Below are positions 3,967 to 42,315 of a stretch of DNA of 64,000 bases, piece after piece. The stretch comes from Magallana gigas (lineage: Eukaryota): contig NC_088860.1 of the NCBI RefSeq assembly GCF_963853765.1, forward strand, positions 5,704,001-5,768,000, in the 5' to 3' direction. Position 1 is the stretch's first letter. Each line of letters opens with the position of its first letter. The notes below the pieces were generated by a model. The model was not told where the DNA came from. It was given only the letters and a program-made list of their open reading frames with translations, and did not search any database. Made by a program: the position numbers and the translations under genes.

Positions 3967-4929
3967 GAAAGTGCGCGCACAAGATTGTAAGTTTGCAGGA
4001 ATCCTCGACACGAATCAATTGGGATTTAAAAATGTCTATAACCTCGAAAGGCTATGTACAGGTTTCAACAAAAATATATTATGTTGAGAGTCGAAGCACA
4101 TGGCTATTCCGGTTATTAAAAACTCACAAGCTTTCAAAAAATGGCAATAAGAGGAAAACCGATGTTAATGCAAACATATTTTAATGAAGTTATATTGTGT
4201 ATATCCTAAAAAAAAAACTAGTAATAAAAAAAGAAAATAGTGTTCAAACAGCAGATCTAGAAATCAATAACAACAAATTAAAATATACCGGTATAATATA
4301 ATTCAACATCATGGTATAATAACAAACATTTAAAACAAAAAAGTTTAATCTTTTAAAAAAAACAACAACAAAAACAAACAAAAAAACCACTAGATGGATT
4401 TGAACCCAAAACACTAAATGGTTGTATTCACTAATCCAGAACGAAACCAGTGAGCCATGCGAGACTTTTCAATATATGCTGTATTTATAAAGTACTGTTT
4501 GAAACAACATTGTCATTTCAATGGACTTTGTTTTTTATCCTTCAAAAAATAATTTGAAAAAGTACATAATTAGTCATCTCTGGGTCATCTCTCCATCTTT
4601 TTTTAAAAAGCGACATTTTTAATGTTGAAATATTTTATCTTTACACGTTTAAAATTTGTGGAGAGAAGACCCAGAGACAACAAAATCATTTAAAAACAGT
4701 TGTACATGTAAATAAGTAGGATTTTGCATGAATTGCATCGTGTTGCTATATTTAGACCCATATTTTGATAAAACCTTTTGCATTTCAAATATTTTTCCAC
4801 TCATTTCACATCCAACAGAAACCAAATAACGGTTATAATTCGAAAAATATTCAAAATAAATTGATGAAATTTTCACTCTCCTTGTGCGCCCAGATTCCTG
4901 CCGAATGTAAGTCTTAAGCGCCCACTTTC
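3967..4929. mobile_element. Non-autonomous Spy-type (PHIS) DNA transposon
   Basis: Imperfect TIRs GAAAGTG.GCGC..AAGA...GCAGGAATC; inserted AAA|TTT with no TSD; empty site AAATTT at 31795-31800 in the duplicate. Confidence 0.8.
4386..4462 (-). mobile_element. tRNA-derived SINE-like head inside the Spy element
   Basis: A box TGGCTCACTGG and B box GGTTCAAATCC on - strand; no proper cloverleaf. Confidence 0.45.
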
Positions 4930-5395
4930 TTTGTCGAAAAATACACCTATCATTGTACTTTAAATGTTTTGAATTCATGTTGATAAAATAAATGAGTTGA
5001 TTTACTTGACAAGGAATTTATTCTCATAACTAACATGCATGGTGTACAGTGTCTTAAATTACACAGTACCTCTAAAAAGTATCTATTTAGCATCACATAC
5101 ATGTTTCTCATGTTACAATCGTTTGTTGAGTTTAAATTCAGCTTGACTTGAACATACCGTATTACAGTGAGTGTTGAACCATGCAAAAGTAATGCGCAGA
5201 AACGATGCTATGAAAATTTTCCATTCGAATAAAAACTAATGCATATTTTGATGCATCAATTTCTATAATTAAGCACAAACGTTTGAATATAGGCAATAGC
5301 TTAGCCAGTGCATGCAGTTAGTTGCTCAGATTAACGCAACCCTTCAGCAAGCTGTAGACGGTGTTTGGACCTTTACAGGGAGAAAAGTATCAAAG

Positions 5396-5441
5396 ATGCA
5401 AACCACTCCTGCTCTGTTTCTGCTGTCCCTGCCAGCAATAG
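5396..5441 (+). pseudogene. Copy A exon 1, signal peptide MQTTPALFLLSLPAI
   Basis: AAGATG start, hydrophobic stretch, G|GTAAGT donor, phase 1 fits exon 2. Confidence 0.8.
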
Positions 5442-6127
5442 GTAAGTTTTATTTGAAGTGTTAAATTCATTGTTTAAATATCAAAGTAGTATAAGCTGTA
5501 ATTTTCATGTCGGAAATTTTTACCGGGAACTTGAATTTACGACTTTTAAAAATGACTTAAAAGATGATTGTTTATAAACTTCTGTTTGTCATATATTTGT
5601 TGGTAACGCAATTCATTGGGGTGGATTAAAGCGAAATGATATTATATTCTCACGGTAGAAAACAGTTTGCTATACATTTTTCACTAGATAAATCGTTCTT
5701 ATAAAACTCAATGATTCATCTTAATCTTATTCATCACGAAGAATTTAGTACCATGCGACATTGACACAATAATTTGCAGCAAAATAAAAATCTATTAAAA
5801 GCAGCTCACTTTGCTTCATTTACGTGCGACGTATATATGTTGTCTGAATATGTCGACATAAAACGTATTTCATTCACTTGCTTCGAACGTGTCTCATTGC
5901 CATGACTAAAACAAGTTTTTAAAATCCAACACTTTGTGTCTTGGTAACTACGAGGCAAGATTACATTAAACTGATTTTTTAACCATTAAATTTCAGCAAA
6001 AATCTCTCTAACAGTTTAAAACATAATCATTCGACTTGGGGCCAGCATGGGTGAAGAAGCAAACTAGGAGATTTAAAAGTTTGATATTTCCAGTGATTGT
6101 TCCGAACTCTTTGTAGGCTGTTTATTA

Positions 6128-6762
6128 TTATTGTGTTCCGATGGGACCACTTCGACCTTCGCACTTTCGCCTTTAGGGCGAAAATGCGAGAGCGCAAAGT
6201 TGCGAAGGCGAAGGAGCGAAAGTGCAAAGATGCGACCGGCGAAGCGCGAAGATGCGATGGCGAAAGTGCGAAGGCAAAGGAGCATACCCCCCTTCCCCCG
6301 GAAAAATTCATTATTAATATAATTTCATACAGTAAATGGGGAGAGGGGGTCCGGATCCCACTCCCCCATGGAAAATTTAATTTTATATAATAAAATTTCC
6401 AAAGTAAGCCTCGGAACCCCCTTCCCCCTTTCCAGTTTGTCTTCTGCCTCAGATGTCATTATATACAGCTAAAATTGTATTTAAACGATTATAAGCTTTA
6501 CAATTAAAAAAAGGCGAAGGCGAAAGCGCGAAGATGCAAAGGCGAGAGTGCGAATTTGCGAAGGCGAAGGAGCGATAGTTGTATTGCTTCTTCGCCTTCG
6601 CAACATTGCACTTCGCATCTTCGCGCTTCACCGTTGCATCATCCCACTTTCGCTTCTTCACCGTCGCACCTTTGCACTTTCGCCTTCGCAACTTCGCACT
6701 TTTGCATCTTCGCCCTATAGGCGAAAGTGCGATGGTCGAAGTGGCCCCTCGGAACACCATAA
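6128..6762. mobile_element. MITE with long TIRs built of TTCGC/GCGAA motifs
   Basis: TTATTGTGTTCCGATGGGACCACTTCGACC... mirrored by ...GGTCGAAGTGGCCCCTCGGAACACCATAA; explains the K/R/A-rich spurious ORFs. Confidence 0.8.
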
Positions 6763-7336: not shown

Positions 7337-7607
7337 ACGTGGTTTGTTACAACGCACTTTGGAAAAAAAATTTAAAAGCGTTAAATTTGGGGCCAAGTCA
7401 ACGCACTTTGAAAATTTTTTTCAAAGTGCGTTTATATGGTTGATGTACGCACTTTGAAAAAAACTTTGTAAAGTGCGTTGACTTGGTCCCAAATTAAACG
7501 CACTTTTAAACAAAATTTCAAAGTGTGTTGATTTTGTCTAAAATTTAACGCACTTTAAAAAAAAATTTCAAAGTGCGTAAATTTTTAAAGTGCGTTGCCA
7601 CAATGGT
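7337..7607. repeat. Inverted array of AACGCACTTT / AAAGTGCGTT motifs (MITE-like); duplicate at about 33855-34122
   Basis: Multiple direct and inverted copies of the 10-mer. Confidence 0.65.
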
Positions 7608-11325: not shown

Positions 11326-11773
11326 TTTCTCGCATTATTTTGCATTAAAACGATGCCCGACAACTTTCTGTTATGATGTTCAAACGTTTACCTTTGGTTT
11401 CTTCCTCTGCGTGCTACAAATAGTGCCAGGCAAGAAGAGAGCAAGCGAGAATTTGTTCAATGAAAATATGTAAAATCTAGTCAATTAAGCTAAAGAACGA
11501 CTAAGCGATTAGCTTATTCCATCGTTTATGATTTTCTTACGGAGAGACGAAGTCTACATTTTACGGCGGCGTAGTAATATACAGTGTAAGACAAAGTCTC
11601 ACACTGATGTCTTACACCGTACAAACCGATCTCACACCGGTGATAATGAAAGAAAAAAACATTCACTCTGGGCATCACATTTTCTCACCGTTGACAGTTT
11701 AAATTAATATTTTTTGAATGGCTGAAGTATCATAGTGACGTAATGATTCCTAGAAGTCTTTTCCTTTTTGCAG

Positions 11774-11872
11774 GGAATTGTTATAGTTCGTTACAAGAAA
11801 GTATGGACTCGCCGATTGATTTTTGCTCATCCATGAACCCTAACTACTATACACACTCCTACACTATGTTCA
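11774..11872 (+). pseudogene. Copy A exon 4 (GNCYSSLQESMDSPIDFCSSMNPNYYTHSYTMF)
   Basis: TTTTGCAG| and |GTAAGT; phase 1-1; SMNP and TMF shared with 38965-39075. Confidence 0.8.
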
Positions 11873-12345
11873 GTAAGTAAGATGCATAGCATGGCCTTTC
11901 ATGCATATGATGATAACGTTCTCTATCTGTTGACAATGAAGAATTTTGACTTTACGTGGTTTAAAAATTGATCAGTTATTTAACTCAATTATTGCTGCGA
12001 GAAGATATCATTTTTGCTTTTTAACGAAAATTCAATTGCTTTGTTGCATTAAGTCTCTTTGTACTCCATTCAGTGTGCAAATAATGATTGTTTGAGATTC
12101 ATACCTGGATCCTTATAAATAATAAATGTAAAATTTCAGAATAGAACTGTATCAGATAAAGATATAAATTAACGTATTACAGCACTGTAGTAACCTGTCT
12201 GCGAAACCATTAACAATTTGGAGAAGAGTTCAATTACATAACTTCTTTGTGTAATATAACCATGAATTAAGTCTATGATAATAGTTACCATTGGCAAATC
12301 TATATTAACGCGAGTAGCTTGTAAATTGAGTAATCTTTACTGTAG

Positions 12346-12555
12346 GACAATCCTTAATTACTGTCAACTGTGCAACAACATTTGAGGGGGCGTATCAGTT
12401 TTCCTATGAGGAGGACTCTGGTTCTGGAGGTATTTGTAATCCTCCGGACAGCCAAATCAAAGCCTGCCAAGACCCCGGATCTAGGTATATCGACAACGAG
12501 GTGTTTTACATGACGTATCGGAAGTGCCTTGATGTACCCATGTCTCGGAATGCAA
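12346..12555 (+). pseudogene. Copy A exon 5 (RQSLITVNCATTFEGAYQFSYEEDSGSGGICNPPDSQIKACQDPGSRY...)
   Basis: 210 nt like B exon 5; about 73% aa identity by hand alignment (51 of 70). Confidence 0.9.
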
Positions 12556-12717
12556 GTCAGTAGTTCAATATACATGTCACCACTGCAAAATAATGTGGCT
12601 TTTCATTGTGGGAACAAAATGTTATATAGGTAGTGAGGTAAACCTCATTGTTGTTTGGTTTGCAAATACGACGACTTCAAGTCTCTTTGTTAACTACACA
12701 GTTCAATAATTTTTTAC

Positions 12718-15700
12718 TTAACTACTAATTGTTTCCCACTAAATACTAACTGTTTCCCACTAACTACTAACTGTTTCCCACTATCTACTTAGTATTTCCC
12801 ACTAACTTCTAACTGTTTCCCACTAACTTCTAATTGTTTCCCACCAACTACTAACTGTTTCCCACTATCTACTAACTGTTTACCACTAACTACTAACTGT
12901 TTCCCACTAACTACTATTGTTTCCCATTAACTTCTAATTGTTTCCCACTAACTTCTAACTATTTTCCACTAACTGCTAACTGTTTCCCACTAACTACTGT
13001 TTCCCACTAACTACTAACCGTTTCAAACTAACAAGTAACTGTTTCCCCACTGACGACTAACTGTTTCCTACTAACTACTAACTGTTTTTCATTAACTTTT
13101 AATTGTTTCTCACTAACTACTTACTGTTTCCCACTAACTACTCACTGTTTTCCACTTACTACTAATTGTTTCCCACTAACGACTAACTGATTCCCAACTA
13201 CTTATTGTTTCCCACTAACAACTTACTGATTCCCATTAACTACTGACTGTTTCCCACTAACTACTAACTGTTTCCAACTTACAATAATTTGTTTCCTACT
13301 ACTAATTGTTTCCCACTACTAATAAATTCCCACTAACAACTAACTGTTTCCCACTAACAAGTCATTGTTTCCCTTTAACTACTAATTGTTTACCACTACT
13401 AATTAATTTCTACTAACAACTTACTGATTACCATTAACTACTGACTGTTTCCCACTAACTTCTAACTGTTTCCAACTTACAATAATTTGTTTCCTACTAC
13501 TAATTGTTTCCCACTACTAATTAATTCCTACTAACAACTAACTGTTTCCCACTAACTTCTAATTGTTTTCCACAAACTACTTACTGTTTCCCACTAACTA
13601 CTTACTATTTCTAACTAACTACTAATTGTTTTCCACAAACTACTAACTGTTTCCCACTAGCTACGAACTGTTTCCCACAAACTACTAACTGTTTCCCACT
13701 ATCTACTAACTATTTCCCACTAACTTCTATCTGTTTCCCACTAACTTCTAATTGTTTCCCACCAACTACTAACTGTTTACCACTACCTACTAACTGTTTC
13801 CCACTAACTACTATTGTTTCCCATTAACTTCTAATTGTTTCCCACTAACTTCTAACTATTTTCCACTAACTGCTTACCGTTTCCCACTAACTACTGTTTC
13901 ACACTAACTACTAACCGTTTCCAACTAACAAGTAACTGTTTCCCCACTAACGACTAACTGTTTCCTACTAACTACTAACTGTTTTTCATTAACTTTTAAT
14001 TGTTTCTCACTAACTACTTACTGTTTCCCACTAACTATTCACTGTTTTCCACTAACTACTAATTGTTTCCCACTAACGACTAACTGATTCCGAACTACTT
14101 ATTGTTTCCCACTAACGACTTACTGATTCCCATTAACTACTGACTGTTTCCCACTAACTACTAACTGTTTCCAACTTACAATAATTTGTTTCCTACTACT
14201 AATTGTTTCCCACTACTAATAAATTCCCACTAACAACTAACTGTTTCCCACTAACAACTCATTGTTTCCCAATGCTAATTAATTCACACTAACAACTGTT
14301 TCCCACTAACAACTCACTGTTTCCCTTTAAATACTAATTGTTTACCACTACCAATTAATTCCTACTAACAACTAACTGTTTCCCACTAACTACTCACTGT
14401 TTCCCACTAACTTCTTATTGTTTTCCACAAACTACTTACTGTTTCCCACTAACTACTAACTATTTCCAACTAACTACTATTTGTTTTCCACAAACTACTA
14501 ACTGTTTCCCACTAGCTACGAACTGTTTCCCACAAACTACTAACTGTTTCCCACTATCTACTAACTATTTCCCACTAACTTCTAACTGTTTCCCACTAAC
14601 TTCTAATTGTTTCCCACCAACTACTAACTGTTTACCACTACCTACTAACTGTTTCCCACTAACTACTATTGTTTCCCATTAACTTCTAATTGTTTCCCAC
14701 TAACTTCTAACTATTTTCCACTAACTGCTTACTGTTTCCCACTAACTACTGTTTCCCACTAACTACTAACCGTTTCCAACTAACAAGTAACTGTTTCCCC
14801 ACTAACGACTAACTGTTTCCTACTAACTACTAACTGTTTTTCATTAACTTTTGATTGTTTCTCACTAACTACTTACTGTTTCCCACTAACTACTCACTGT
14901 TTTCCACAAACTACTAATTGTTTCCTACTAACGACTAACTGATTCCCAACTACTTATTGTTTCCCACTAACGACTTACTGATTCCCATTAACTACTGACT
15001 GTTTCCTACTAACTACTAACTGTTTCCAACTTACAATAATTTGTTTCCTACTACTAATTGTTTCCCACTACTTATAAATTCCCACTAACAACTAACTGTT
15101 TCCCACTAACAACTCATTGTTTCCCAATGCTAATTAATTCACACTAACAATTGTTTCCTACTAACAACTCACTGTTTCCCTTTAACTACTAATTGTTTAA
15201 AACTACCAATTAATTCCTACTAACAACTAACTGTTTCCCACTAACTACTCACTGTTTCCCACTAACTTCTAATTGTTTTCCACAAACTACTAACTGTTTC
15301 CCACTAACTACTAATTGTTTTCCACAAACTACTAACTGTTTCCCACTAGCTACGAACTGTTTCCCACAAACTACTAACTGTTTCCCACTAGCTACGAACT
15401 GTTTCCCACAAACTACTTACTGTTTCCCACTATCTACTAACTATTTCCCACTAACTTCTAACTGTTTCCCACTAACTTCTAATTGTTTCCCACCAACTAC
15501 TAACTGTTTACCACTACCTACTAACTGTTTCCCACTAACTACTATTGTTTCCCATTAACTTCTAATTGTTTCCCACTAACTTCTAACTATTTTCCACTAA
15601 CTGCTTACTGTTTCCCACTAACTACTGTTTCCCACTAACTACTAACCGTTTCCAACTAACAAGTAACTGTTTCCCCACTAACGACTAACTGTTTCCTACT

Positions 15701-16435
15701 AACTACTAACTGTTTTTCATTAACTTTTGATTGTTTCTCACTAACTACTTACTGTTTCCCACTAACTACTCATTGTTTTCCACAAACTACTAATTGTTTC
15801 CCACTAACGACTAACTGATTCCCAACTACTTATTGTTTCCCACTAACGACTTACTGATTCCCATTAACTACTGACTGTTTCCTACTAACTACTAACTGTT
15901 TCCAACTTACAATAATTTGTTTCCTACTACTAATTGTTTCCCACTACTTATAAATTCCCACTAACAACTAACTGTTTCCCACTAACAACTCATTGTTTCC
16001 CACTGCTAATTAATTCACACTAACAATTGTTTCCTACTAACAACTCACTGTTTCCCTTTAACTACTAATTGTTTAAAACTACCAATTAATTCCTACTAAC
16101 AACTAACTGTTTCCCACTAACTACTCACTGTTTCCCACTAACTTCTAATTGTTTTCCACAAACTACTAACTGTTTCCCACTAACTACTAATTGTTTTCCA
16201 CAAACTACTAACTGTTTCCCACTAGCTACGAACTGTTTCCCACAAACTACTAATTGTTTCCCACTAACTACTAATTGTTCCCATCTAACGACTTACTGTT
16301 TCCAACTAACTATTAATTGTTTCCCACTAACTACTAACTGTTTCCTACTAACTACTTATTGTTTCCCACTACCTACTTACTGTTTCCCACTAACTTTTAA
16401 CTGTTTACTACTAACTATTAATTGTTTCCCACTAG
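12718..16435 (+). repeat. 21-bp minisatellite (CACTAACTACTAACTGTTTCC)n, about 175-180 units, with higher-order repeat of about 855 bp
   Basis: Direct reading; marker AACAAGTAAC recurs at 13030, 13927, 14782, 15658. Confidence 0.97.
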
Positions 16436-16554
16436 GTAAACGGTACCGTTGTATGGGATCATGGTCGGAAATTAAACCAGATGGTTTAAATTATACTTAT
16501 GCTGCAATAGCTGAAATTGTAGCAGAAAATGCCGAAGAGAAATTCAAGTGCTTG
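16436..16554 (+). pseudogene. Copy A exon 6 (KRYRCMGSWSEIKPDGLNYTYAAIAEIVAENAEEKFKCL)
   Basis: Acceptor CCCACTAG is the last minisatellite unit; donor GTAATG; homologous to 39958-40073. Confidence 0.88.
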
Positions 16555-16881
16555 GTAATGTGTGTGTGTGTGTTTGTGGGAGTGCGTGCTGGTGAGAGGG
16601 ATTGCAGAAAGTTATCATCTTATTGCTCTTTATCATATTATTATTTTCAATTATTTTGGTTGAATGGAATCAAGGTGTCCTGCATCATTCACCTATATAC
16701 CTACACTACATTCCAATAAAGCAAAAAATAAACACTTTCAAATTAATTCTTGCAAATTGTATTCTTTTGCCCGTTTCAGTAATGAAGAATTTCATTCCTT
16801 TGTATTTGAATAACAGTAGCCAATATAATATATTGAAAGAAAAATTCTTTTATAAATCAAATCAGTTTGTTTACATTTTAG

Positions 16882-16999
16882 ATGACCTTGACAAAGGATA
16901 AAGAGAACATTGAGACCAGATGGGTCATGTCTTCCCGTGCTGAATGCAAGACTCTCATCTCCATCTACACAGGACCAGTCAAACTAGTTCTCACAAAAA
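16882..16999 (+). pseudogene. Copy A exon 7 (MTLTKDKENIETRWVMSSRAECKTLISIYTGPVKLVLTK)
   Basis: TTTTAG| and |GTGAGT; homologous to 40239-40359. Confidence 0.88.
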
Positions 17000-17539
17000 G
17001 TGAGTAATTTTTTTAAGAAACAGCTCACGATGCAGAGAATGAGATGATTGCTTAAGCAGGTTATCATGTTTTTAAATAACGTGACAATATGCATACACAC
17101 TTTCAAAATAGGGTTGAATGCTACACCAACAATTTTTTGCTGGATTGTTATTGTTATTGGTGATTGATGTATGTAAAAAAAATCTTTTATTTTGAAGAGA
17201 AAATTGAAAAAAAAAGTTTTGTTGGCTATAAAACATTAAAAATTAAAATTTTCTGTCAGTAAGTATATTGTTTCAAAAAGGTCATGTGTTTTCTACCAGG
17301 GAATTAATTTTTAGAAATATTCATATATATAAAAAAGAACTATTCAAATCCTGGCACGAATTGAAACAAAAACTCAATGTATTTCATTATATAGAATACG
17401 AATACCTCATCGTTAAAAAACATTCTTTAAATTGATTAAACTTTAAAATCAAAAAGATATCTCATTGACAGTTACAGGGATTTTATTAATTTTTATTTTT
17501 TTCTATACAATAATTTATTTTTTTTTAAATTGTTTATAG

Positions 17540-32300: not shown

Positions 32301-33997
32301 GTAAGTTTTATTTGAAGAACATGTATTAAATTCATTGTTTAAATATCAAAGTAGTATATGCTGTAATTTTCACGTCGGAAATTTTTACCGGGAACTTGAA
32401 TTTACGACTTTTAAAAATGACTAAAAAGATGATTGTTTATAAACTTCTGTTTGTCATATATTTGTTGGTAACGCAATTCATTGGGGTGTATTAAAGCGAA
32501 ATAATATATTATCACGGTAGAAAACAGTTTGCTATACATTTTTCACTAGATAAATCGTTCTTATAAAACTCAATGATTCATCTTAATCTTATTCATCACT
32601 AAGAATTTAGTACCATGCGAAATTGACACAATAATTTGCTGCTAAATAAAAATCTATTAAAAGTAGCTCACTTTGCTTCATTTACGTTCGGCGTGTATAT
32701 GTTGTCTGAATATGTCGACATAAAACGTATTTCATTCACTTGCTTCGAAAGTGTCTCATTGCAAAGATGCGACCGGCGAAGCGCGAGGATGCGATGGCGA
32801 AAGTGCGAAGGCAAAGGAGCTTAGCTCCCCCCCCCTCGGAAAAATTCATTATTAATATAATTTTATACAGTAAATGGCGAGGGGGGGGGGGTCCGGATCC
32901 CACTCCTCCCTGGAAAATTTAATTTTATATAATAAAATTTCCAAAGTAAGCCTCGGAACCCCCCCCCCCTTCCAGTTTGTCTTCTGCCTCAGATGTCATT
33001 ATATACAGCTAAAATTGTATTTAAACGATTATAAGCTTTACAATTATAAAAAGGCGAAGGCGAAAGCGCGAAGATGCGAAGGCGAGAGTGCGAATTTGCG
33101 AAGGCGAAGGAGCGATAGTTGTATTGCTTCTTTGCCTTCGCAACATTGCACTTTCGCATCTTTGCGCTTCGCCGTTGCATCATCCCACTTTCGCTTCACC
33201 GTGGTACCTTCGCACTTTCGCCTTCGCAACTATAGGCGAAAATGCGAAGGTCGAAGTGGCCCCATCAGAACACCATAAATAGGAGATGATTATATGAAGA
33301 AGAGGAGAAATGATTCAGCTCAAGTTATGTTTTCGTTGCTAAAATTGATACTTGACAGACGCGTCAAAAAGCCAATGTGACCTTGACAACATCTTCGCTA
33401 GCCAAGGTTTTCTAATCCGCACCGCTTCTCAAAAGTAAGATGCCTTGACAAATGCAAACTAAAACAATAATATTAACGATGAGCATAAATTGTAATAAGC
33501 AATGAATTGTCTTTGCCAGTTTGACAGTTGTTTTAATGGATGGTCATGTATTTCCTATAAAATGAATATCTAACCTTTTGACAATGGTTAGGTTTTGAAT
33601 AATGATGACGATTAAATTATTCTGGATGAATTTAGTTTAAACGTTTTCCCAGAAAACAGATGGGCAATAAGATAAAATTGTAATTGCCGGAAAACATCGT
33701 ACGGTACAACATATTGAAGGTTATTTACTGATGAAGCTCATCAAATCGTTGTCAATGATTAGGATACTTAATTGTGCGATACAAACTATATTTCTGACCT
33801 TAAAACCGATATCAAGTATTTGGCAATCCTTATACATGTAACTCTTTATTTAGAACGCGTGGTTTGTAACAACGCACTTTGGGAAAAAAATTGAAGTTCG
33901 TTAAATTTGGGACCAAGTCAACGCACTTTGAATTTTTGAAGTATGGTTGATGTACACTCTTAACGCACTTTGAAAAAACTTTGTAAAGTGCGTTGAC

Positions 33998-34028
<31 letters not shown>

Positions 34029-37000
34029 ATTTTAAAGTGTGTTGATTTTGTCTAAAATTTAACGCGCTTTGAAAAAAATTTCATAGTGCGTAAATTATTA
34101 AAGTGCGTTGCCACAATGGTTCCCTCTCATCCTTGTTAATTTAAAAAATACACGATGTCAGTGGACAACGCCCCCCCCCCCAAAAAAAAAACAAAAAAAC
34201 AAAAAAACAAAAAAATCGAAAGGTAAAATTAAATATTATTTTGCACCAATCGCTACTTCCATAGCCAAAAAAAGTAAAAAAAAAATCATTTACTTTTTAT
34301 ACAACACCTACATGTACCTAAGGATCTTTCTTTAATAATATTTACTATATTCACTGCTAGAAAAAATTTAAAAAGTTATACATTGAAACTTTGGCCATGA
34401 CATTTGCCGTCACCTTCTTGCTTTCTGTTGTTCACTGTACAAGTAGATCGATCTAGAAATGACACACAACGAAGAAATGTTAAAGAATAAAATCAAAGTT
34501 TAATTAAAAAGATGAAAGTTTGTACCAGTACTTTAACTTTAGCCCTTGTTGAATCAGAATGAAGATTAAAATATTAATTTTTAAAATCAGAGTAATTAAA
34601 GTTACATTTTCTTATACAGAGTTAAAAATAACTCACCTGATGACAAGAATGCCCTGTGAAATCTTCTTTGCTCTGTCACGGAGGGGGTGTTGACCAAAAT
34701 GTTTGTTGGCCGAGCCCTTGCTGGGGTCCCAGTCAGGGGGGTAGTACTTGTTTTGTGACTTTCTCTCAGCCTAAAACATTAAACAAAATATATCTTTGAA
34801 GGTGTGACCAATTTGAGGGTGATACCAATAAAACAATCACATTTTCCTTATCAGTTGGCATCTATAGATTCATGTGAAACATAAACAGTTGGATCTGCTT
34901 ATCTATTTATAATGATATATTCATCATGCTAATGATCACATGCTCAGACAATATCTTTGAAGTCAATGAAGTGATTGATTTTAATCAGATATGAACATGA
35001 CTCTTTTGCCGAGATTCCATTGCAGGATATTCAAAATGGTCAAGAGTAGGGACTGCCATCTTGAAACACAATTTTCAAGTTCATAGGGTATAATTTGTAA
35101 TCTCTTCAAAGGCTATTATTCTTCTGTACATTTTCGCTCTCACAGAACTAATTCGTCCTCTAAAATACATGGCAAAAAGAAAAATAAATTGCAAAACTGG
35201 AGCAAGCAAGGCAAATGAATATTCCAATTTAAACCGCAACAAGCTACATAAAATGGATAATAGAGCAGAAATTCAGAAAAATGATTATGAAAGACTGTCC
35301 AAAGATTAAGTGAAGGCATCAGTCAAATATCAAGCTAAGGCGAATCTCTATAGAGAAGAAGGATCAACCAAACTGTCTTGGTTATCTAAAACACTTCACG
35401 GGAGTTCGAATTTTTATCAATAAAAAGCCCAAAAACTTACTTTATTGACTGATTCATGAGCTTTGCTCTTTTATAACCCCATATTACCACATTAACTGTT
35501 TTTGCAACAAAATCGCTGCCACTTTTAACATCACATTTGAAAATTCGCTGTTAATGGTTGCCATGTTAATGATAACATCCGAGACATTCCGAGTGCGATT
35601 TACGACAAAATGGCAGGCAAATTAAAGCATATATTTTACCAAAATGCCTTGGTAAGACTCATTAAATGGATATTTTGTAGACTAAACTACACATGCATGT
35701 TCAAAAAGGTTTGTTATGTATAAAAATGTGTTTTTCCTCTGCAGTTTATTTTTAACAGACTTAAAATCGATGCAAAGCTAATCCGCTTTGCGGCTGCTAC
35801 ATTGCAAGTATATGGGACGAATTCTTACTGTGACCTGAGTGTAGCCTGGTCACGGTAAGATTATTCTTTCTAATAGCTCATGGGTCAGTCAATAAAGTAA
35901 GTTTTTTTGGCTTTATTGAAAAAAATTCGAACTCCTGTGAACACTTTCACACTGCTACAATTTTGTAAGGCAGTTACGACAGAGTGGAAAAACAACTGAG
36001 AGTCGAATCAGAACTGTTATGATGTTATTTTGAAAATAACTACACTATGATGACTATCAAATTTATTCATATGTCAGAATGGTTAGAAAAATGTTCTCAG
36101 ATTTTTTTGTCAGTGCAATTATCATACCATGTTTACTGTACGATTCAACCAATATATACTGTAAAACTAAATAGTACACGTTTATAAACAAAAGTGTGTC
36201 AAAAACGTTAGACGTACCATTTTGACAGGAAGTTGGAGTTCCAATACTCTAGTCACTGTCGTTCAGACGCTTGTTTACGATTGGCTGTTCGTTTGCTCTA
36301 AAACGCGTTCGCCCTTGACGCCTTTCGCTCTAGTTTTGGTATGTCCGTTCGCTCTTGAAACCGTTCGCACTGTGTCCGTTCGCCTTAATTTTATATAGGA
36401 TTAATTATAATTTATATATTTTTGTGTATTCTTGTCAATTTAAACATATATAATTAATGAAAACAATACCGCCCTTTCTACTTCTACCTACATAATATTC
36501 ACCATGGTTGACAGTAGTTTGATACAGTTACATACAGTTACATGTTCCATTTCCGTATATATCTCATTTAGAGATCAAAGGATTGTGTGATGTAAATTCT
36601 TTAAAGATAGAATAGGTGATAATCATCTGCTAAGCTTCTGAATGTGCCAATTAAAGTCTCAAAGTCTTTAATTGTTTAAAAAACACCAAGCAAATCATTA
36701 TAAAAACAAGAAGACGGTTATCGACAATGTAGGCCTACGGCAATAAAATCTTACAATTTACATATACCAATTACGTCATTTTTGATGAAGGAAAAACATA
36801 TTATATACGAATAATTAATAAAAGTTAACAAGTTTTAAGTTAAAAGTAAATGAAATAACTTATAATATTGTTTATTTATAAACAAGGAGCGAACGAGGTT
36901 TAAGGCGAACGATTATTTGGGCGAACGATAATTAGAGCGAAGGGACCTAGAGCGAACGGACCAAGGCGAACATGTGGATAGGGCGAACGCACCCGATACC

Positions 37001-40000
37001 AATTTTCAATTTTTTTTTCTGATATAGGTGGAGACAAATCATTTAGCCAGTTTGATATGTAGTTTATCAAATATGATATTTTAAAAAGCAAAAATGGTTT
37101 TAAATTTTTTAACTCTGGAGATTCTGAAAAAGTTTTTTTAGGTAAACTTGAATTTGAAAGACTGATCCCAAAGGAGAGTTTGGTCTACTGAGGAATCAAA
37201 CTAATTACCAAATTATTAGTCCCCTACCGGTTTTCACTGGAGGGGACTATAGTTTTTCTCTGCGTCCGTCTGTCCATCGGTCCGTCTGTCTGTCTCACTT
37301 CAGTTTCCACACTTTTTTTCTTTATGCGTTTAAGGAATAATATGAAATTTGCTGAACAGCTTCAAAATGTCAAACTACAGATCAAGTTTACACTTTTGTA
37401 GCGTTGGTTGATATATTTTCGAGAAAATTAATTTTTTATATTCCAGTTTTTTAATGTTCGGGTTCGAAATTATGCATAACAGTGCATTGTTTTCACAATT
37501 TCCACAAACCGGTAGGGGACGTGTATTGCTTATGCAATACTCTCAGAATGCTTGTTGTTTCTGTAAATGTGTATTTACGGGTTAATTAAAAGTTTAAATT
37601 TAATTTTTTCAAAATAAAGTACCTCCTCTTTTTTTTACTCTCTATAATACTAAATTGCCTGTCCAAGATATTTATGCAGCACCTTTTGACCATTATATAT
37701 AATGTTATACCTACTGTGAAAAAAAATGCAATTGAAATCAATGAAAGGAAAAATATCCAAGATACCTTCATTGAATCATTATTTAGCTTTTTCTCTCTGA
37801 TTGATTGACAGGAACTAATACAGATTTAATTCTTATGACAGATTAAATTCTTATGGAGTTTTATAATTTCAAAGTTGATGTAAAGTTTTATGATACAGAG
37901 CTTTCAATTATTTATTCTGTTAAAATTTAATGTTTATTTTTAAAATATCTTTCTCTTTAAAAAACAAAAAACTGTTAAATGAATTTGAAACCATTTAAAA
38001 GTGTTTGATATAATTATTCCGATATAGATTCAAGAGTTCTTAATCAATAATTATAAATAAATTACATGTATTGAATAATCATTTTTTACTGCAGTGTGGG
38101 GGCGGTGCAACATCCCAGCCTACTTTCACGGTGACTGGTACAGTCGAGAATCGGGTACAGACATCAAAACTCTGGTCAACGCCGACAAGTGGGACAGTAA
38201 TGAGGATGAAACACAGCTAGAGTGTGTGGACATTTTCATCCACTCCAACCCCGGGCTTCAGCAAGACGGAGACAATGTGACTATGCTTATGGTCAAAACG
38301 TAAGACTTCATGCAGAAAATGATTATTGAATCAATAACTTTTTCATTAGCCTAGTTGACAAATGATGTCCAAAAAATTCGGTATTCTCTAAACAATAAAA
38401 TTATTGTGTGAGGTTGGTAATTAATGTGGAATTAACTTTATATTTTGTTGGTTAAGGTGTGCTTAAGATCATGAATTACTCATGAATATTAGAGTTTGCA
38501 TACTCAGTAAATGTCAGATCTTTTGTATTTATCATGTATACATTTCTCTAGGTGAAACTTTTTAACGTAGATGTTTAATAATATATCCTAAAATAAAATT
38601 TTTGATTTTTCAGAAAGGAGCCTGTGAAAATGACTTTATGTTCTGTTTTATTGCAGGGGAGGGAGTAATTTGAACACATGCTACATGTGTGTCGATGTCT
38701 TGTGGAGAACTCCAAACATTCTACAATATAGACAAGGTATGAATAATATCAACAGACTAAATATTGAAAACAAGAGTATGATAATTAAACTAAAAAAAAG
38801 TAAAGTTTCTATAAACTCTTAGTACAAATAAGTTTCATGATATGCACCATGAATGTAGATTGACAATGTAAGTTTGTGACTCAGTTTTAGGGCAAGTTTG
38901 AATAAAAACAGAATTTCAAATGTTGAAGAGTCAACACTGATTGTGATTGTGTGTCTTTAAATAGAGGACTGTATAACAGCGCGGTCTAGGAGCCAGATTT
39001 CGCTGAACGATTCCTGTAAGTCGATGAACCCTTGGTACGGGCTTCCCAGCATTGATGTCACTTTCACCATGTTCAGTAAGTGTATTAAGCCATTCTATGC
39101 AGATTAATTTGACTATTGTGACCATTACCTATGCAAACAAGTAAAATGAATACAAACGTCATGAACTGTATATATGTATGAAGGCTGTACGAAGAAAACA
39201 ATGATATCGAAAGTAGATCTGTTAAAATGATCCATTTTTGCGATTATTCATTGAGCACCTGTGGCCTGCTGGATTAGAAAGTGGTCAATGGCTCCACTGT
39301 CAGGGTTCATATTCCAATAGACCATAAATTAATTTTATTGCAATTTTTATCATTTTTATCATTTATATGAAAAAAAAAGTATAGTACATGTATCTTCAAT
39401 TTGTCAACTCACATTATATTTGTATTTTCCAGAACAATCCCTAGAGAAGATTAACTGTGTAACAACATTTGAGGGGGTGTATCAGTTTTCCTATGAAGTG
39501 GATACCGGTGGTGGAGGTATCTGTAACCACCCAGATAGCCAGATCAAAGCTTGCCAAGAACCTGGATCTCAATATGTCGACAACGATGTGTTTGTCATGA
39601 CGTATCGGAAGTGCCTTGATGTGTCGACGTCAAAAAATGAACGTATGTCATGTTTGCAACTTTACAAAAATAGGTTTATGAGAAATTGAATATGGCAATG
39701 ATTTTTATCTTTTTTTCAAAATAAAACATATAAGAGTTCTGAGCTTTGAAATTGAAAAAATGATCTCATCTTAATTACATATATACTTAAAGGTACTTTT
39801 TATACAAAATCATGAATAATTTCTCAATATTTTCAGTGACTGAAATGTGACATTTGTGTAAGATGTGTGGTTTGATTGTTGCTGATAGTTTGTTTTTGAA
39901 TGTTGCTGATTATAATAATTTGTATTTTTCACTAATAGTTTAATATATGTTAATTAGAGATTCGGTACCAGTGTATGGGTTCGTGGTTCGCGGTGAGGAA

Positions 40001-42315
40001 TGGAATCGGCTACACCTATGCTGCTGTTGCTGACACCGTGGAACAGGATACCAGAGAAAAATTCAAGTGCATGGTAATTGATACATGACATTGTATTGTT
40101 TTAACAATTATTACCAAATTCTGATAAAAAATTACTGCAATTCTTCCAGATTGAAATACACTTTGTCCTCATACACATGTACATGTAGTTGAAGAATCGT
40201 CAAGCCAACAAACCTTCATTGTTTGATTTATCTTATAGATGACATTGAAGAACCAGAAAGATGCCAACAATCAGATCCGATGGGTCATGTCTCGTTTCCC
40301 CGATTGCACAAGTTTGAGTGGCGTTTACAGGGGTCCACTCAAATTAGTTTTAACCAGAAGTAAGTCAATTTCATGTCTACCCGTGCTGAATGCGAGACTC
40401 TCATCTCCATCTACACAGGACCGGTCAGACTAGTTCTCACGAAAAGTGAGTAATTTTTTTAAGAAACAGCTCACAATGCAGAGCATGAGATGATTGCTAA
40501 AGCAGGTTATATTATCATGTTTTTAAATAACATGACAATATCCATACACACTTTCAACATAGAGTTGAATGCTACACCAACAATTTTTTGCTGGATTGTT
40601 ATTGTTATTGGTGATTGATGTATGTAAAAAAAATTCTTTTATTTTAAAGAGAAAATTGAAAAAAAAAGTTTTGTTGACTATAAAACATTAGAATTTAAAT
40701 TTGCTGTCAGTAAGTATATTGTTTCAAAAAGGTAATGTGTTTTCTACCAGGGAATTATTTTAAGAAATATTCATATATATAAAAAACAAATATTGAAAAC
40801 CTGGCACGAATTGAAACAAAAAAGCAATGTATTTGATTTTATGGAATACGAATACCTCATCGTTAAAAAACATTATTTAAATTGTTTAAACTTTAAAATC
40901 AAATAGATATCTCATTGACAGTTACAGGAATTTTATTAATTTTTATTTTTTTTCTATACAATAATTTATTTATTTTTAAATTGTTTGTAGTTCCAATTTC
41001 CAACGATTACAATACCCCTCGCTGCAGTTTCGATAAGGATATAGTTGGCAATTGGTTCATAAAGCGTAATAGAATTACTATAGATGATAAAATGCATTTC
41101 CCTCCTGCACTGAATCAAATGGATTTCTATTTGTCCTGTCAGCAAACAAATGGAACTCGATATCTTCTGTCACAAACAGTACTTGGAAAATGGTAAGATC
41201 TTTCTGTCTTATCATTTCAACAGTTATTTAGAGAAAATGCATACATAGAATTAACANNNNNNNNNNNNNNNNNNNNNNNNNNNNNNNNNNNNNNNNNNNN
41301 NNNNNNNNNNNNNNNNNNNNNNNNNNNNNNNNNNNNNNNNNNNNNNNNNNNNNNNNNNNNNNNNNNNNNNNNNNNNNNNNNNNNNNNNNNNNAGATAATA
41401 CCTCCGCTGAGGCTCTCTAGATATACATCACCTGGGGTGCCAGGGCCCCCCCCCCCCCCCCCCCCCCCCCGGATCAGTAATGCTATTCAGCGGTATAAAT
41501 AAATCATACATCTGTACGTTATGTACAAAATATATATTTTCATTAGTATTTATAATTGTATTTTATTAAAGCGTAAATAGACGTATATATGAATTAGCAC
41601 ATTGTATATATCTCTGCATACATGTATATAGTAATAACAATACTACTGTAAATTCCTTATATTACGCGAGTACTTAATTCCGCGATCCCGCTTTTTTGTA
41701 TCAAATCGCGAGAATATAAAATCGCAAACGTTGAACTTTTCTCCTTATTTCTTATAGTTTTCAACTCTCAGAAAATAATGGCGAGATTTTAAAATCCGCA
41801 AAGGATGCTTCTCGCGATTTTACGCGGATATTAATTCCTCGCGATTAATTAGGAATTTGCAGTATTCGGGAAGGTAACATTCAGTCATTGATATAATGTT
41901 CGTATCANNNNNNNNNNNNNNNNNNNNNNNNNNNNNNNNNNNNNNNNNNNNNNNNNNNNNNNNNNNNNNNNNNNNNNNNNNNNNNNNNNNNNNNNNNNNN
42001 NNNNNNNNNNNNNNNNNNNNNNNNNNNNNNNNNNNNNNNNNNNNNNNNNNNNNNNNNNNNNNNNNNNNNNNNNNNNNTCCCGATCCTCTCAAATTGTCGT
42101 TTAACTGCATTCCACCTGTATCTCAAAGGACCGTGTAGTGAGCGACCAGCGCGCTAGTTTCCCTTCGTCATCGAAAGCAAGATTTTTGTCTTGCCTAGAT
42201 GGCCCAGTGGTAAGCGCGGTGGCCGCTCACTGCTAGGAGAATGGGTTCCAGAGGTCGTGAGTTCAAGCCCCGGCCGGGGCGGAGGTGGAGCTCCAAAAAG
42301 GTGAATATCTCTGTG

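What the first reader, a model, noticed from the sequence alone, without database searches (positions are those of the whole stretch)
12718..16435. A 3.7-kb minisatellite that is an amplified 3' splice-site signal
Seen: the 21-bp unit parses as CACTAAC-TACTAAC-TGTTTCC on the sense strand of intron 5, i.e. two branch-point consensus heptamers plus a pyrimidine run, repeated about 175-180 times. The array ends exactly at the exon: the last unit reads TGTTTCCCACTAG|GTAAACGG, so the usual TAA becomes the acceptor TAG. A TACTAAC at 16409-16415 puts the branch A 21 nt upstream of the AG. By eye only about a dozen AG dinucleotides occur in 3.7 kb, giving a very large AG-exclusion zone. The orthologous B intron is 315 bp and has no array. 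Established: UACUAAC is the optimal U2-pairing branch site, and the first AG downstream of a branch point is normally chosen. Inference: the intron's own branch/PPT region was tandemly amplified, and AG-free units were tolerated or favoured. This would be a satellite constrained by splicing grammar, offering hundreds of candidate distal branch points.
Basis: partly seen in the sequence, partly recalled or inferred. Interest (0 to 1): 0.85.

Follow-up and report, generated by a model that had tools for sequence, protein, structure and literature searches.

The report
Branch-site minisatellite forming an intron's end
One copy of a duplicated gene has an intron swollen from about 0.3 to 3.9 kb by 183 tandem copies of a 21-base unit that looks like a splicing branch site plus pyrimidine tract, and the last copy supplies the acceptor actually used in mRNA; it is a real, tidy variant of the already known splice-junction repeats, with no sign that selection shapes the array.

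Summary
A 21-bp minisatellite (12719-16435, about 183 units) fills the intron. It carries 131 YACTAAC motifs and only 12 AG. It ends exactly at the acceptor AG, and an RNA-type contig joins 12555 to 16436 there. The unit occurs nowhere else in the 564-Mb genome, so it is not a dispersed satellite or a transposon.

The selective reading is not supported.
- AG count equals a column-shuffle null (11 vs 11.4).
- About one random 21-mer in three lacks AG.
- The branch-like heptamers are no better conserved than the spacer.
- A variant unit carrying an acceptor-identical TAG was amplified five times.
- The real AG-free zone is 208 nt, not 3.7 kb.

The array is four ~870-bp higher-order copies of an old ~42-unit array. 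Two other RNA assemblies show exon-6 skipping (out of frame) and a retained intron start, so splicing may be inefficient.

I found similar junction-abutting arrays in Nup155 and beta-mannosidase. Earlier notes of this scan report many more on other DNA of this genome. The class is known as "mirages" in amphioxus and from human F7. This array differs because its unit holds no exon sequence.

Best reading: a tolerated passenger born at the intron's 3' end.

The parts
11773..11872 (+).
   Evidence: The loose-end consensus of contigs X1, X2 and X4 before 12346 maps at 11843-11872 with one mismatch. The GTAAGT donor and open frame are seen. The start coordinate is approximate, placed after ...ttttgcag.
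12346..12555 (+). Exon 5 of paralogue A, the first half of a DUF7042 domain.
   Evidence: Contigs of X1, X2 and X4 cover 12346-12555 exactly. Pfam PF23069 E=2.9e-9. The donor is CAA followed by GTCAGT.
12556..12718 (+). Unique, non-repeated 5' part of the intron.
   Evidence: It has a single match in the 564-Mb genome, itself. It shows no significant likeness to the repeat unit.
12719..16435 (+). 21-bp minisatellite of about 183 units. The sense-strand unit is CACTAAC-TACTAAC-TGTTTCC. Its last two bases are the acceptor AG.
   Evidence: TRF, unit alignment, motif counts. All genome-wide matches to the unit lie here, all on the + strand.
12919..13815 (+). Higher-order repeat copy H1 (897 bp).
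   Evidence: Lag profile. It is 90-94% identical to H2-H4.
13816..14670 (+). Higher-order repeat copy H2 (855 bp).
   Evidence: It is 97% identical to H3.
14671..15546 (+). Higher-order repeat copy H3 (876 bp).
   Evidence: It is 96-97% identical to H2 and H4.
15547..16435 (+). Higher-order repeat copy H4. It runs into the acceptor.
16213..16225 (+). Nearest of five internal pseudo-acceptors (TGTTTCCCACTAG). Over these 13 bases it is identical to the real acceptor. The other four have their AG at 13659, 14514, 15348 and 15390.
   Evidence: AG context listing. No joint to any of them was seen in three RNA assemblies.
16226..16433 (+). The true AG-exclusion zone upstream of the acceptor (208 nt, about 10 units).
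   Evidence: It holds 6 YACTAAC and 10 CTRAY motifs.
16409..16415 (+). TACTAAC, the most likely branch site (branch A at 16414, 21 nt from the 3' splice site).
   Evidence: Read from the sequence. Its use as a branch point is inferred, not mapped.
16434..16435 (+). Acceptor AG, the last two bases of the array.
   Evidence: Joint 12555 to 16436 in an X1 contig at depth 8.6 with GT..AG ends. It is homologous in position and phase to the paralogue B acceptor.
16436..16554 (+). Exon 6 (119 nt), the continuation of DUF7042. It is absent from the X2 contig, which joins exon 5 directly to exon 7.
   Evidence: (E=0.0075). Skipping gives a stop codon after 6 codons.
16882..17000 (+). Start of exon 7. 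The end coordinate is approximate.
   Evidence: The 30-nt loose end behind 12555 in X2 matches only at 16882.
39433..39642 (+). Exon 5 of paralogue B.
   Evidence: It is 84.7% identical in DNA to paralogue A and 75% in protein. Pfam E=2.6e-9.
39643..39957 (+). Homologous intron of paralogue B, 315 bp, without an array.
   Evidence: It cannot be aligned with the paralogue A intron.
39958..40073 (+). Exon 6 of paralogue B.

Best explanation
This is a locus-specific intronic minisatellite that arose by local tandem duplication at the 3' end of a short intron in paralogue A of a DUF7042-family gene. It now is that intron's 3' end. The final units supply the branch site (probably TACTAAC at 16409-16415), the pyrimidine run and the acceptor TAG, which differs by one base from the unit's TAA.

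An old array of about 42 diverged units was later copied about four times as an ~870-bp block. That took the intron to 3.9 kb.

The array is a passenger. It is tolerated because whichever unit lies next to the exon rebuilds a usable branch site, pyrimidine tract and AG, and because the unit by its composition has almost no AG.

It is an intron-only relative of the splice-junction minisatellites ('mirages') that are frequent in this genome.

What is shown: the array, its uniqueness, its architecture and the splice junction. What is inferred: branch-site use, local origin and neutrality.
For: Array and motifs.

Acceptor use: the joint 12555 to 16436 is seen in RNA-type contig X1, and exon 5 is spliced to the upstream exon in X1, X2 and X4. 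Because array sequence reaches the AG, the branch point must lie in array units.

Local origin:
- All 87 matches to the 22-mer unit (up to 2 mismatches) and all 40 matches to two units lie in this array, all forward.
- The 5' intron flank is single-copy.
- Paralogues B and C lack the array.

Two-step growth: adjacent units are 72% identical, while ~870-bp blocks are 90-97% identical.

No selection signal:
- AG 11 vs 11.4 +/- 1.9 under column shuffle.
- From the window's AG frequency, (1-0.047)^21 = 0.36 of random 21-mers lack AG.
- Heptamer conservation is 0.88 and 0.80, against 0.90 for the spacer.
- A pseudo-acceptor variant was amplified five times.

Same habit elsewhere in the genome:
- A different 40-bp unit runs, through a diverged terminal unit (P=0.0004), to within about 12 nt of the acceptor of the last Nup155 exon.
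- Donor-side arrays occur in beta-mannosidase and another gene.

Tolerance logic from the literature: repeats between branch site and 3' splice site impair splicing unless they carry a branch motif without creating an AG (PMC10078293).
Against: - No branch point has been mapped.
- Only one contig shows the canonical junction, and the run types are guesses.
- Two other assemblies show exon-6 skipping and a retained intron start. The array may therefore be mildly harmful or regulatory rather than neutral.
- The unit shows no significant likeness to the 3' end of the paralogue's intron (local P=0.75; last 45 nt P=0.026). Descent from the ancestral branch/PPT region is therefore not demonstrated.
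- No sister-species orthologue could be examined.
- With about 42 independent units, the conservation tests have limited power.
Confidence: 0.6

Rival explanations
1. It is an ordinary intronic minisatellite whose likeness to splice signals is a by-product of an A/C/T-rich unit. It arose anywhere in a short intron and spread to the exon edge. The branch-like heptamers have no link to the ancestral branch site.
For: - The genome is crowded with minisatellites; nearly every 7-10 kb I fetched holds more than one.
- Arrays with periodic TACTAAC are not enriched over the reversed-motif control (136 vs 612 hits), and many of them carry AG.
- The unit is not significantly similar to the paralogue's intron end.
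- There is no selection signal.
Against: - Ending with zero spacer at the acceptor is expected in under about 1% of random placements in a ~300-nt intron (my estimate).
- Orientation, branch-like motif and pyrimidine run all fit an intron 3' end.
- The Nup155 array shows the same layout with a diverged terminal unit at the acceptor.
- Several other arrays are clearly copied from junctions.
Confidence: 0.22
2. It is a selected splicing element. The hundreds of UACUAAC-like sites bind SF1/U2 in cis, or serve as distal branch points. This slows or tunes 3' splice-site commitment and produces regulated unproductive splicing (exon-6 skipping or intron retention) of this paralogue.
For: - 131 exact YACTAAC motifs.
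- Tandem UACUAAC repeats bind SF1 with high affinity and delay splicing in vitro in Gomafu/MIAT (PMC3116199).
- The X2 contig joins exon 5 to exon 7, which is out of frame with a stop after 6 codons. The X4 contig retains the intron start although the upstream intron is removed. Array contigs have depth similar to the exons.
Against: - Motif positions are no better conserved than the spacer, and intact motifs are no more frequent than column shuffles predict.
- The recent four-fold block duplication looks like drift.
- Only the last 208 nt can feed the true AG.
- There is no baseline for paralogue B.
- Contigs cannot give isoform levels.
Confidence: 0.1
3. It is a degenerate true 'mirage'. The original unit spanned the intron-exon boundary (AG plus the exon start), and the array later lost the exon-like part.
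For: - Mirage-type arrays are reported as common in this genome (earlier scan notes; my own donor-side cases).
- Five internal units carry the same TAG as the acceptor.
Against: - The consensus unit has no AG and no likeness to exon 6 (score 7-8 vs null 9-11).
- The TAG variant differs from the canonical unit by two substitutions and continues as unit sequence, not as exon sequence.
Confidence: 0.05
4. It is a transposon-borne or dispersed satellite inserted into the intron, or an assembly artefact.
For: None was found. Only a weak 70% match to a different 20/40-bp array on another chromosome.
Against: - Every genome-wide match to the unit lies inside this array.
- The flank is single-copy.
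- There is no room for a transposon end between the array and the AG.
- Array pieces recur in independent runs X2 and X4.
Confidence: 0.03

Closest known systems
[quoted passage not shown] Sources: PMC3087553, PMC3902484.
   Same: These are tandem arrays inside genes, sited at a splice junction, on either the 5' or the 3' side. The authentic site next to the exon is used and normal mRNA is made. They are length-unstable and their mechanism of origin is unknown.
   Different: Mirage units span the boundary and contain exon sequence plus the AG or GT. Here the unit is purely intronic (branch-like motifs plus a pyrimidine run), has no AG in its consensus and no likeness to the exon. The copy number (183) and the higher-order structure are far larger than the amphioxus cases described.
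Human F7 intron 7 37-bp VNTR, whose first unit spans the exon 7 donor (PMC1557585).
   Same: It is a minisatellite butted against an exon, giving pseudo-sites identical to the authentic one that stay silent. It serves as a natural model for how the spliceosome chooses among identical sites. Here five pseudo-acceptors are identical to the real one over 13 nt.
   Different: It is on the donor side, its unit includes the exon end, and it has few copies. The selection rule there is 5'-to-3' scanning for the first donor. Here the last acceptor is used, presumably through exon definition and the first-AG rule.
Tandem UACUAAC repeats of the nuclear lncRNA Gomafu/MIAT, which bind SF1 (PMC3116199).
   Same: The RNA carries many copies of the optimal branch-site heptamer. 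Those repeats bind SF1 more tightly than ordinary metazoan branch sites and slow splicing in vitro.
   Different: The Gomafu repeats sit in a retained exon of a stable nuclear RNA and are conserved across vertebrates. Here they sit in an intron that is removed, in one paralogue only, with no conservation signal. SF1 binding is untested.
AG-exclusion zones and distant branch points (PMC1431707).
   Same: There is an unusually long AG-free stretch (208 nt) upstream of the acceptor.
   Different: In that class the branch point lies at the far end of the zone and is often regulatory. Here a consensus branch motif sits 21 nt from the AG. The zone is a side effect of a G-poor repeat unit and is interrupted 11 times across the array.
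Human splicing-associated tandem repeats, e.g. the NARS2 GTTTTTT repeat between branch site and 3' splice site (PMC10078293), and the CFTR TG/T tract cited there.
   Same: These are tandem repeats at the 3' end of an intron that affect use of the downstream exon. In that study's model, added units are harmless only if they bring a branch motif and no new AG. That is the tolerance logic proposed here.
   Different: They are short microsatellite-type repeats of a few units, and the effect arises from pushing the branch site away. Here each unit brings its own branch motif.

Membership tests
Mirage / splice-junction minisatellite | A tandem array inside a gene, lying directly at an exon-intron boundary. 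| tested here: met
   The last two bases of the array are the acceptor AG of the RNA-supported junction 12555/16436.
Mirage / splice-junction minisatellite | The repeat unit spans the boundary: it contains exon sequence and the splice dinucleotide. | tested here: not met
   The consensus unit has no AG. Unit vs exon 6 gives a local score of 7-8 against a shuffle null of 9-11.
Mirage / splice-junction minisatellite | Only the site next to the exon is used; repeated pseudo-sites stay silent. | tested here: inconclusive
   The canonical joint is seen in X1. No joint to the five pseudo-acceptors is seen in three assemblies. Depth is low, and contigs drop rare forms.
Mirage / splice-junction minisatellite | Length instability between alleles. 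| tested here: inconclusive
   X2 and X4 contigs join array parts differently (skips of 438 and 866 nt, and go-backs). Short-read collapse of 97%-identical blocks would look the same.
AG-exclusion-zone / distant-branch-point introns | A long AG-free stretch immediately upstream of the 3' splice site. | tested here: met
   208 nt, 16226-16433.
AG-exclusion-zone / distant-branch-point introns | The branch point actually used lies far upstream, near the 5' edge of the zone. | not testable with these tools
   This needs lariat or branch mapping. A consensus motif 21 nt from the AG makes a distant branch unnecessary.
SF1-binding UACUAAC tandem repeats (Gomafu type) | Multiple tandem UACUAAC motifs in the transcript. 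| tested here: met
   53 TACTAAC and 78 CACTAAC on the sense strand.
SF1-binding UACUAAC tandem repeats (Gomafu type) | The repeats reside in a stable, retained RNA and are conserved. | tested here: not met
   They are intronic and spliced out. They are absent from paralogues B and C. Motif columns are not preferentially conserved.
SF1-binding UACUAAC tandem repeats (Gomafu type) | Binding of SF1. | not testable with these tools
   This needs CLIP or pull-down.
Dispersed or transposon-borne satellite | The same unit at several loci, or flanked by transposon ends. | tested here: not met
   87 of 87 and 40 of 40 genome-wide matches lie inside this array. The flank is single-copy.
DUF7042-domain gene (host gene) | A match to Pfam PF23069 above its cut-off. 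| tested here: met
   Exon 5 of A and of B score 37.4 and 37.5 bits against a cut-off of 27. Exon 6 continues the profile. There are 19 family matches in the genome.

The most novel reading that the evidence does not exclude
Intron 3' ends (the branch-site to AG segment) are a recurrent birthplace of minisatellites in this genome. They would give a distinct, intron-only subclass of junction arrays. In that subclass the unit composition is filtered by splicing: a unit must carry a branch motif and few AG. Large members such as this one would measurably lower splicing efficiency (exon skipping, retention) and so act as length-variable modifiers of gene output.
Probability: 0.25. Interest if true: 0.65.

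Novelty: new variant of a known kind. Interest (0 to 1): 0.4.

Why it matters
The array is a natural experiment in 3' splice-site choice. One intron offers 131 consensus branch motifs and five pseudo-acceptors identical to the real one, yet mRNA with the correct junction is made. It mirrors the human F7 donor-side array that was used to establish scanning rules.

If array length proves polymorphic and correlates with the exon-6 skipping and retention hinted at here, it would show how the very abundant junction-associated minisatellites of this genome modulate gene expression.

It also gives a concrete example for asking why tandem arrays nucleate at splice junctions, a mechanism the amphioxus literature calls unclear (PMC3087553).

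The claim that would have made it remarkable, a satellite held in shape by splicing grammar, finds no support.

Tried and rejected
1. Selection against AG: rejected. The column-preserving shuffle gives 11.4 +/- 1.9 against 11 observed. AG-free 21-mers are common by composition.
2. Preferential conservation of the branch heptamers: rejected. Intact YACTAAC 132 vs 124 +/- 5.6, P about 0.1.
3. Dispersed satellite or transposon: rejected.
4. Coding repeat: one frame of the consensus unit is open on each strand, but indels break it. The only ORF of 30 aa or more overlapping the array is 36 aa.
5. Homology of the unit to the paralogue B intron end, to exon 6, to exon 5 or to the 5' intron flank: none significant.
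6. Paralogue C as an outgroup: it is nearly identical to B and carries an unrelated insertion at the relevant place, so it is uninformative.
7. Genome-wide enrichment of TACTAAC-periodic arrays: none seen (136 hits vs 612 for the reversed control). Hit counts scale with array size, so this is a weak test.
8. Pfam on short flanking exons of other arrays found nothing for four of six. PDB searches gave nothing for L054 and only insignificant matches (E about 0.7) for L053.
9. Paper searches for a described acceptor-side branch-site minisatellite and for oyster intronic minisatellites found no direct precedent.
10. Earlier-findings look-ups by place (near) and by the word TACTAAC gave nothing.
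11. An annotation-based census of array-to-splice-site distances could not be done, because no gene annotation is available through the tools.
Full report
**Observation.** The array is real and is as described. Tandem Repeats Finder reports one array at 12719-16434 with period 21, 182.1 copies, 76% matches and consensus TAACTACTAACTGTTTCCCAC. A wrap-around alignment cuts it into 183 units. In 12718-16435 there are 53 TACTAAC and 78 CACTAAC, or 35 per kb against 2.1 per kb in the whole window. There are 12 AG, or 3.2 per kb against 47 per kb. The sequence ends ...TGTTTCCCACTAG followed by GTAAACGG. TACTAAC lies at 16409-16415, which puts its branch A 21 nt from the splice site.

**Gene and RNA evidence.**
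- The flanking exons encode a DUF7042 domain. Exon 5 scores 37.4 bits (E=2.9e-9) and exon 6 continues the profile.
- The window holds two tandem paralogues, A at about 1815-25517 and B from about 28496. A third paralogue, C, lies 79 kb away on the other strand.
- In B the homologous intron is 39643-39957 (315 bp), with the acceptor in the same position and phase and no array. B is a paralogue, not an orthologue.
- I laid contigs of three RNA-type assemblies and one raw RNA run on 12250-16750.
  - X1: a 616-nt contig joins 12555 to 16436 (3880 nt skipped, GT..AG). The acceptor at the end of the array is therefore used.
  - X1, X2 and X4 all show exon 5 starting at 12346, spliced to an upstream exon that ends at 11872.
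  - X2: a contig joins exon 5 directly to the start of exon 7 at 16882. Exon 6 is 119 nt, so this form is out of frame and stops after six codons.
  - X4: a contig with the upstream intron removed runs 30 nt into this intron.
  - X2 and X4 also hold array pieces at depths similar to the exons.
- Contigs cannot give isoform levels, and the run types are guesses. This is therefore only a hint that the intron is spliced inefficiently.

**Uniqueness.** The genome has 564 Mb in 29 contigs. All 87 matches to the 22-nt unit (up to two mismatches) and all 40 matches to a two-unit pattern lie inside this array, all on the + strand. A 401-nt piece finds only itself and, at 70%, a different array on another chromosome. 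The 163-nt intron segment before the array is single-copy.

**Architecture.** Adjacent units are about 72% identical. Blocks 855-897 bp apart are 90-97% identical. The array is therefore an old run of about 42 diverged units that was later copied about four times. Only about 42 units are independent observations.

**Tests of the selective reading.**
- Shuffling letters within each unit column keeps the unit's composition. It predicts 11.4 +/- 1.9 AG, and 11 are observed.
- The consensus has one G, preceded by T, so AG poverty follows from the unit itself. With AG at 47 per kb, about 36% of random 21-mers lack AG on a given strand.
- Intact YACTAAC motifs number 132 against 124 +/- 5.6 expected.
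- Mean conservation is 0.88 and 0.80 for the two heptamers and 0.90 for the spacer. The figures are the same within one block.
- Five internal units read TGTTTCCCACTAG, identical to the true acceptor over 13 nt. They were spread by the block duplication.
- The uninterrupted AG-free zone before the exon is 208 nt, with 6 YACTAAC and 10 CTRAY motifs.
- In sum, nothing indicates that selection keeps branch motifs or excludes AG. 'Hundreds of candidate distal branch points' shrinks to about ten that can reach the true AG.

**Origin.**
- The unit shows no significant likeness to the paralogue B intron (local score 12 vs 12.9 +/- 2.1). The last 45 nt of the two introns align only marginally better than shuffles (P=0.026).
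- The unit shows no likeness to exon 6, exon 5 or the 5' flank.
- Local birth is therefore inferred from uniqueness and from the zero-nucleotide junction with the acceptor, not from a recovered seed.

**The same habit elsewhere.**
- Nup155. The weakly similar array on another chromosome lies in the last intron of Nup155; the exon matches PDB 7fik residues 1344-1386 with E=1.7e-7. It is on the sense strand and has a different 40-bp unit with CTAAC and CTGAC motifs and no AG in the consensus. It continues through a diverged terminal unit to about 12 nt from the acceptor (P=0.0004).
- Acceptor side, other cases. Among arrays found with a periodic TACTAAC pattern, a perfect 24-bp triplication sits 15 nt before an acceptor of a long open exon. 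A 20-bp array with two AG per unit ends 7 nt before a probable TPR exon.
- Donor side. Two arrays are copies of exon end plus donor. One is in beta-mannosidase (6ddt, E=1.1e-20); the other has the unit ACAGATACCAG followed by GTATGTTAGT.
- These cases were picked by a splice-like motif, so they give no unbiased rate.
- Earlier notes of this scan, on other DNA of this genome, report many splice-junction minisatellites. They name the amphioxus 'mirages' as precedent and call the genome Pacific oyster. I checked the mirage literature (PMC3087553, PMC3902484). I did not check the species or those loci.

**Mechanism.** The array reaches the AG and the AG is used, so the branch site and pyrimidine tract of this intron are array units. 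This is the firm functional statement, although the exact branch is inferred. The rest of the array is best read as a passenger. It is tolerated because any unit left beside the exon rebuilds a working 3' end. Upstream pseudo-acceptors lack a downstream exon within reach, except the one at 16224. That logic agrees with the human NARS2 repeat, where added units are harmless only if they bring a branch motif and no AG (PMC10078293). A role as an SF1/U2 sink, as for the UACUAAC repeats of Gomafu (PMC3116199), is possible but has no support beyond the skipping and retention contigs.

**Comparison and novelty.** The array sits with the splice-junction minisatellites: amphioxus mirages, and human F7 intron 7 (PMC1557585). 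It fails their defining feature that the unit spans the boundary, because it contains no exon sequence and no AG. It meets the AG-exclusion-zone criterion (PMC1431707) only in the trivial sense of a 208-nt G-poor repeat. I rate it a new variant of a known kind. It is notable for its size and for being built of the optimal branch heptamer, but not for any demonstrated constraint.

**Limits.**
- No branch mapping was possible.
- Only one read-laying run was allowed.
- There is no annotation for a census.
- There is no sister-species sequence.

Noticed in passing
L013:173-2706 (G000:C7:41857077-41859610): The last intron of a Nup155 gene carries a 2.5-kb sense-strand array. An older 20-bp unit is overlain by 47 copies of a 40-bp unit at 91%, with CTAAC/CTGAC motifs and no AG in the consensus. 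Through a diverged terminal unit it reaches about 12 nt from the acceptor of the terminal coding exon.
   Followed up: partly
L050:3232-3426 and 5163-6123 (G000:C5:957231-957425 and 959162-960122): In a beta-mannosidase gene (exon ...RVWGGG followed by GTAAGT, PDB 6ddt E=1e-20), a 42-bp array of 4.7 copies at 98% identity starts in the exon end and repeats the donor. A second 42-bp array, rich in GTAAGT/GGTAAC, lies 1.7 kb further along the + strand.
   Followed up: partly
L053:3611-3756 (G000:C4:398610-398755): Seven 97%-identical copies of a 21-bp unit, ACAGATACCAG followed by GTATGTTAGT, begin at the end of an open exon (...ILDGNISDRYQ). This is an amplified exon end plus donor. The gene family was not identified.
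   Followed up: partly
L054:3538-3624 (G000:C2:58412037-58412123): A perfect triplication of a 24-bp segment containing TACTAAC lies 15 nt upstream of an acceptor. That acceptor opens an 84-codon open frame containing GFLMKRRRWPLKGW. It looks like a very young branch-site duplication.
   Followed up: partly
L056:1807-3383 and 4108-4755 (G000:C2:4995806-4997382 and 4998107-4998754): Two arrays lie near exon edges in what looks like one gene (the exons are inferred from open frames). A 19-bp unit repeated 84 times starts 23 nt after a GTAAGT donor. A 20-bp unit repeated 32 times, with two AG per unit, ends 7 nt before the acceptor of a probable TPR exon. AG-rich arrays are therefore also tolerated next to acceptors.
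   Followed up: partly
window 1815-25517 vs 28496-52992: This is a tandem segmental duplication carrying the two DUF7042 paralogues. The flanks are 92-98% identical. The stretch holding exons 5-6 is only about 85% identical in exon 5, and its introns cannot be aligned. This suggests either gene conversion of the flanks or fast divergence of this part. Within copy B, 45620-48930 recurs at 49788-52992.
   Followed up: no
G000:C8:5795361-5795564 (- strand; L048): A third paralogue, nearly identical to B in exon 5, lies 79 kb downstream on the other strand. Its homologous intron carries an unrelated insertion with a (GGCGTC)n run where B has its branch/PPT region.
   Followed up: partly
window 6186-6714, 7447-7595 and 33054-33227, 33960-34091: Paired clusters of 22-30-bp GCGAAAG-type repeats occur in both orientations, together with 50-bp hairpin-like repeats (ACGCACTTT...AAAGTGCGT). 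They are present in both duplicated copies and are possibly a foldback or MITE-like element.
   Followed up: no
window 12344-12375: One 60-nt X2 contig enters exon 5 two bases early (12344) from a different upstream sequence. This could be an alternative upstream exon or acceptor, or a chimeric contig.
   Followed up: no
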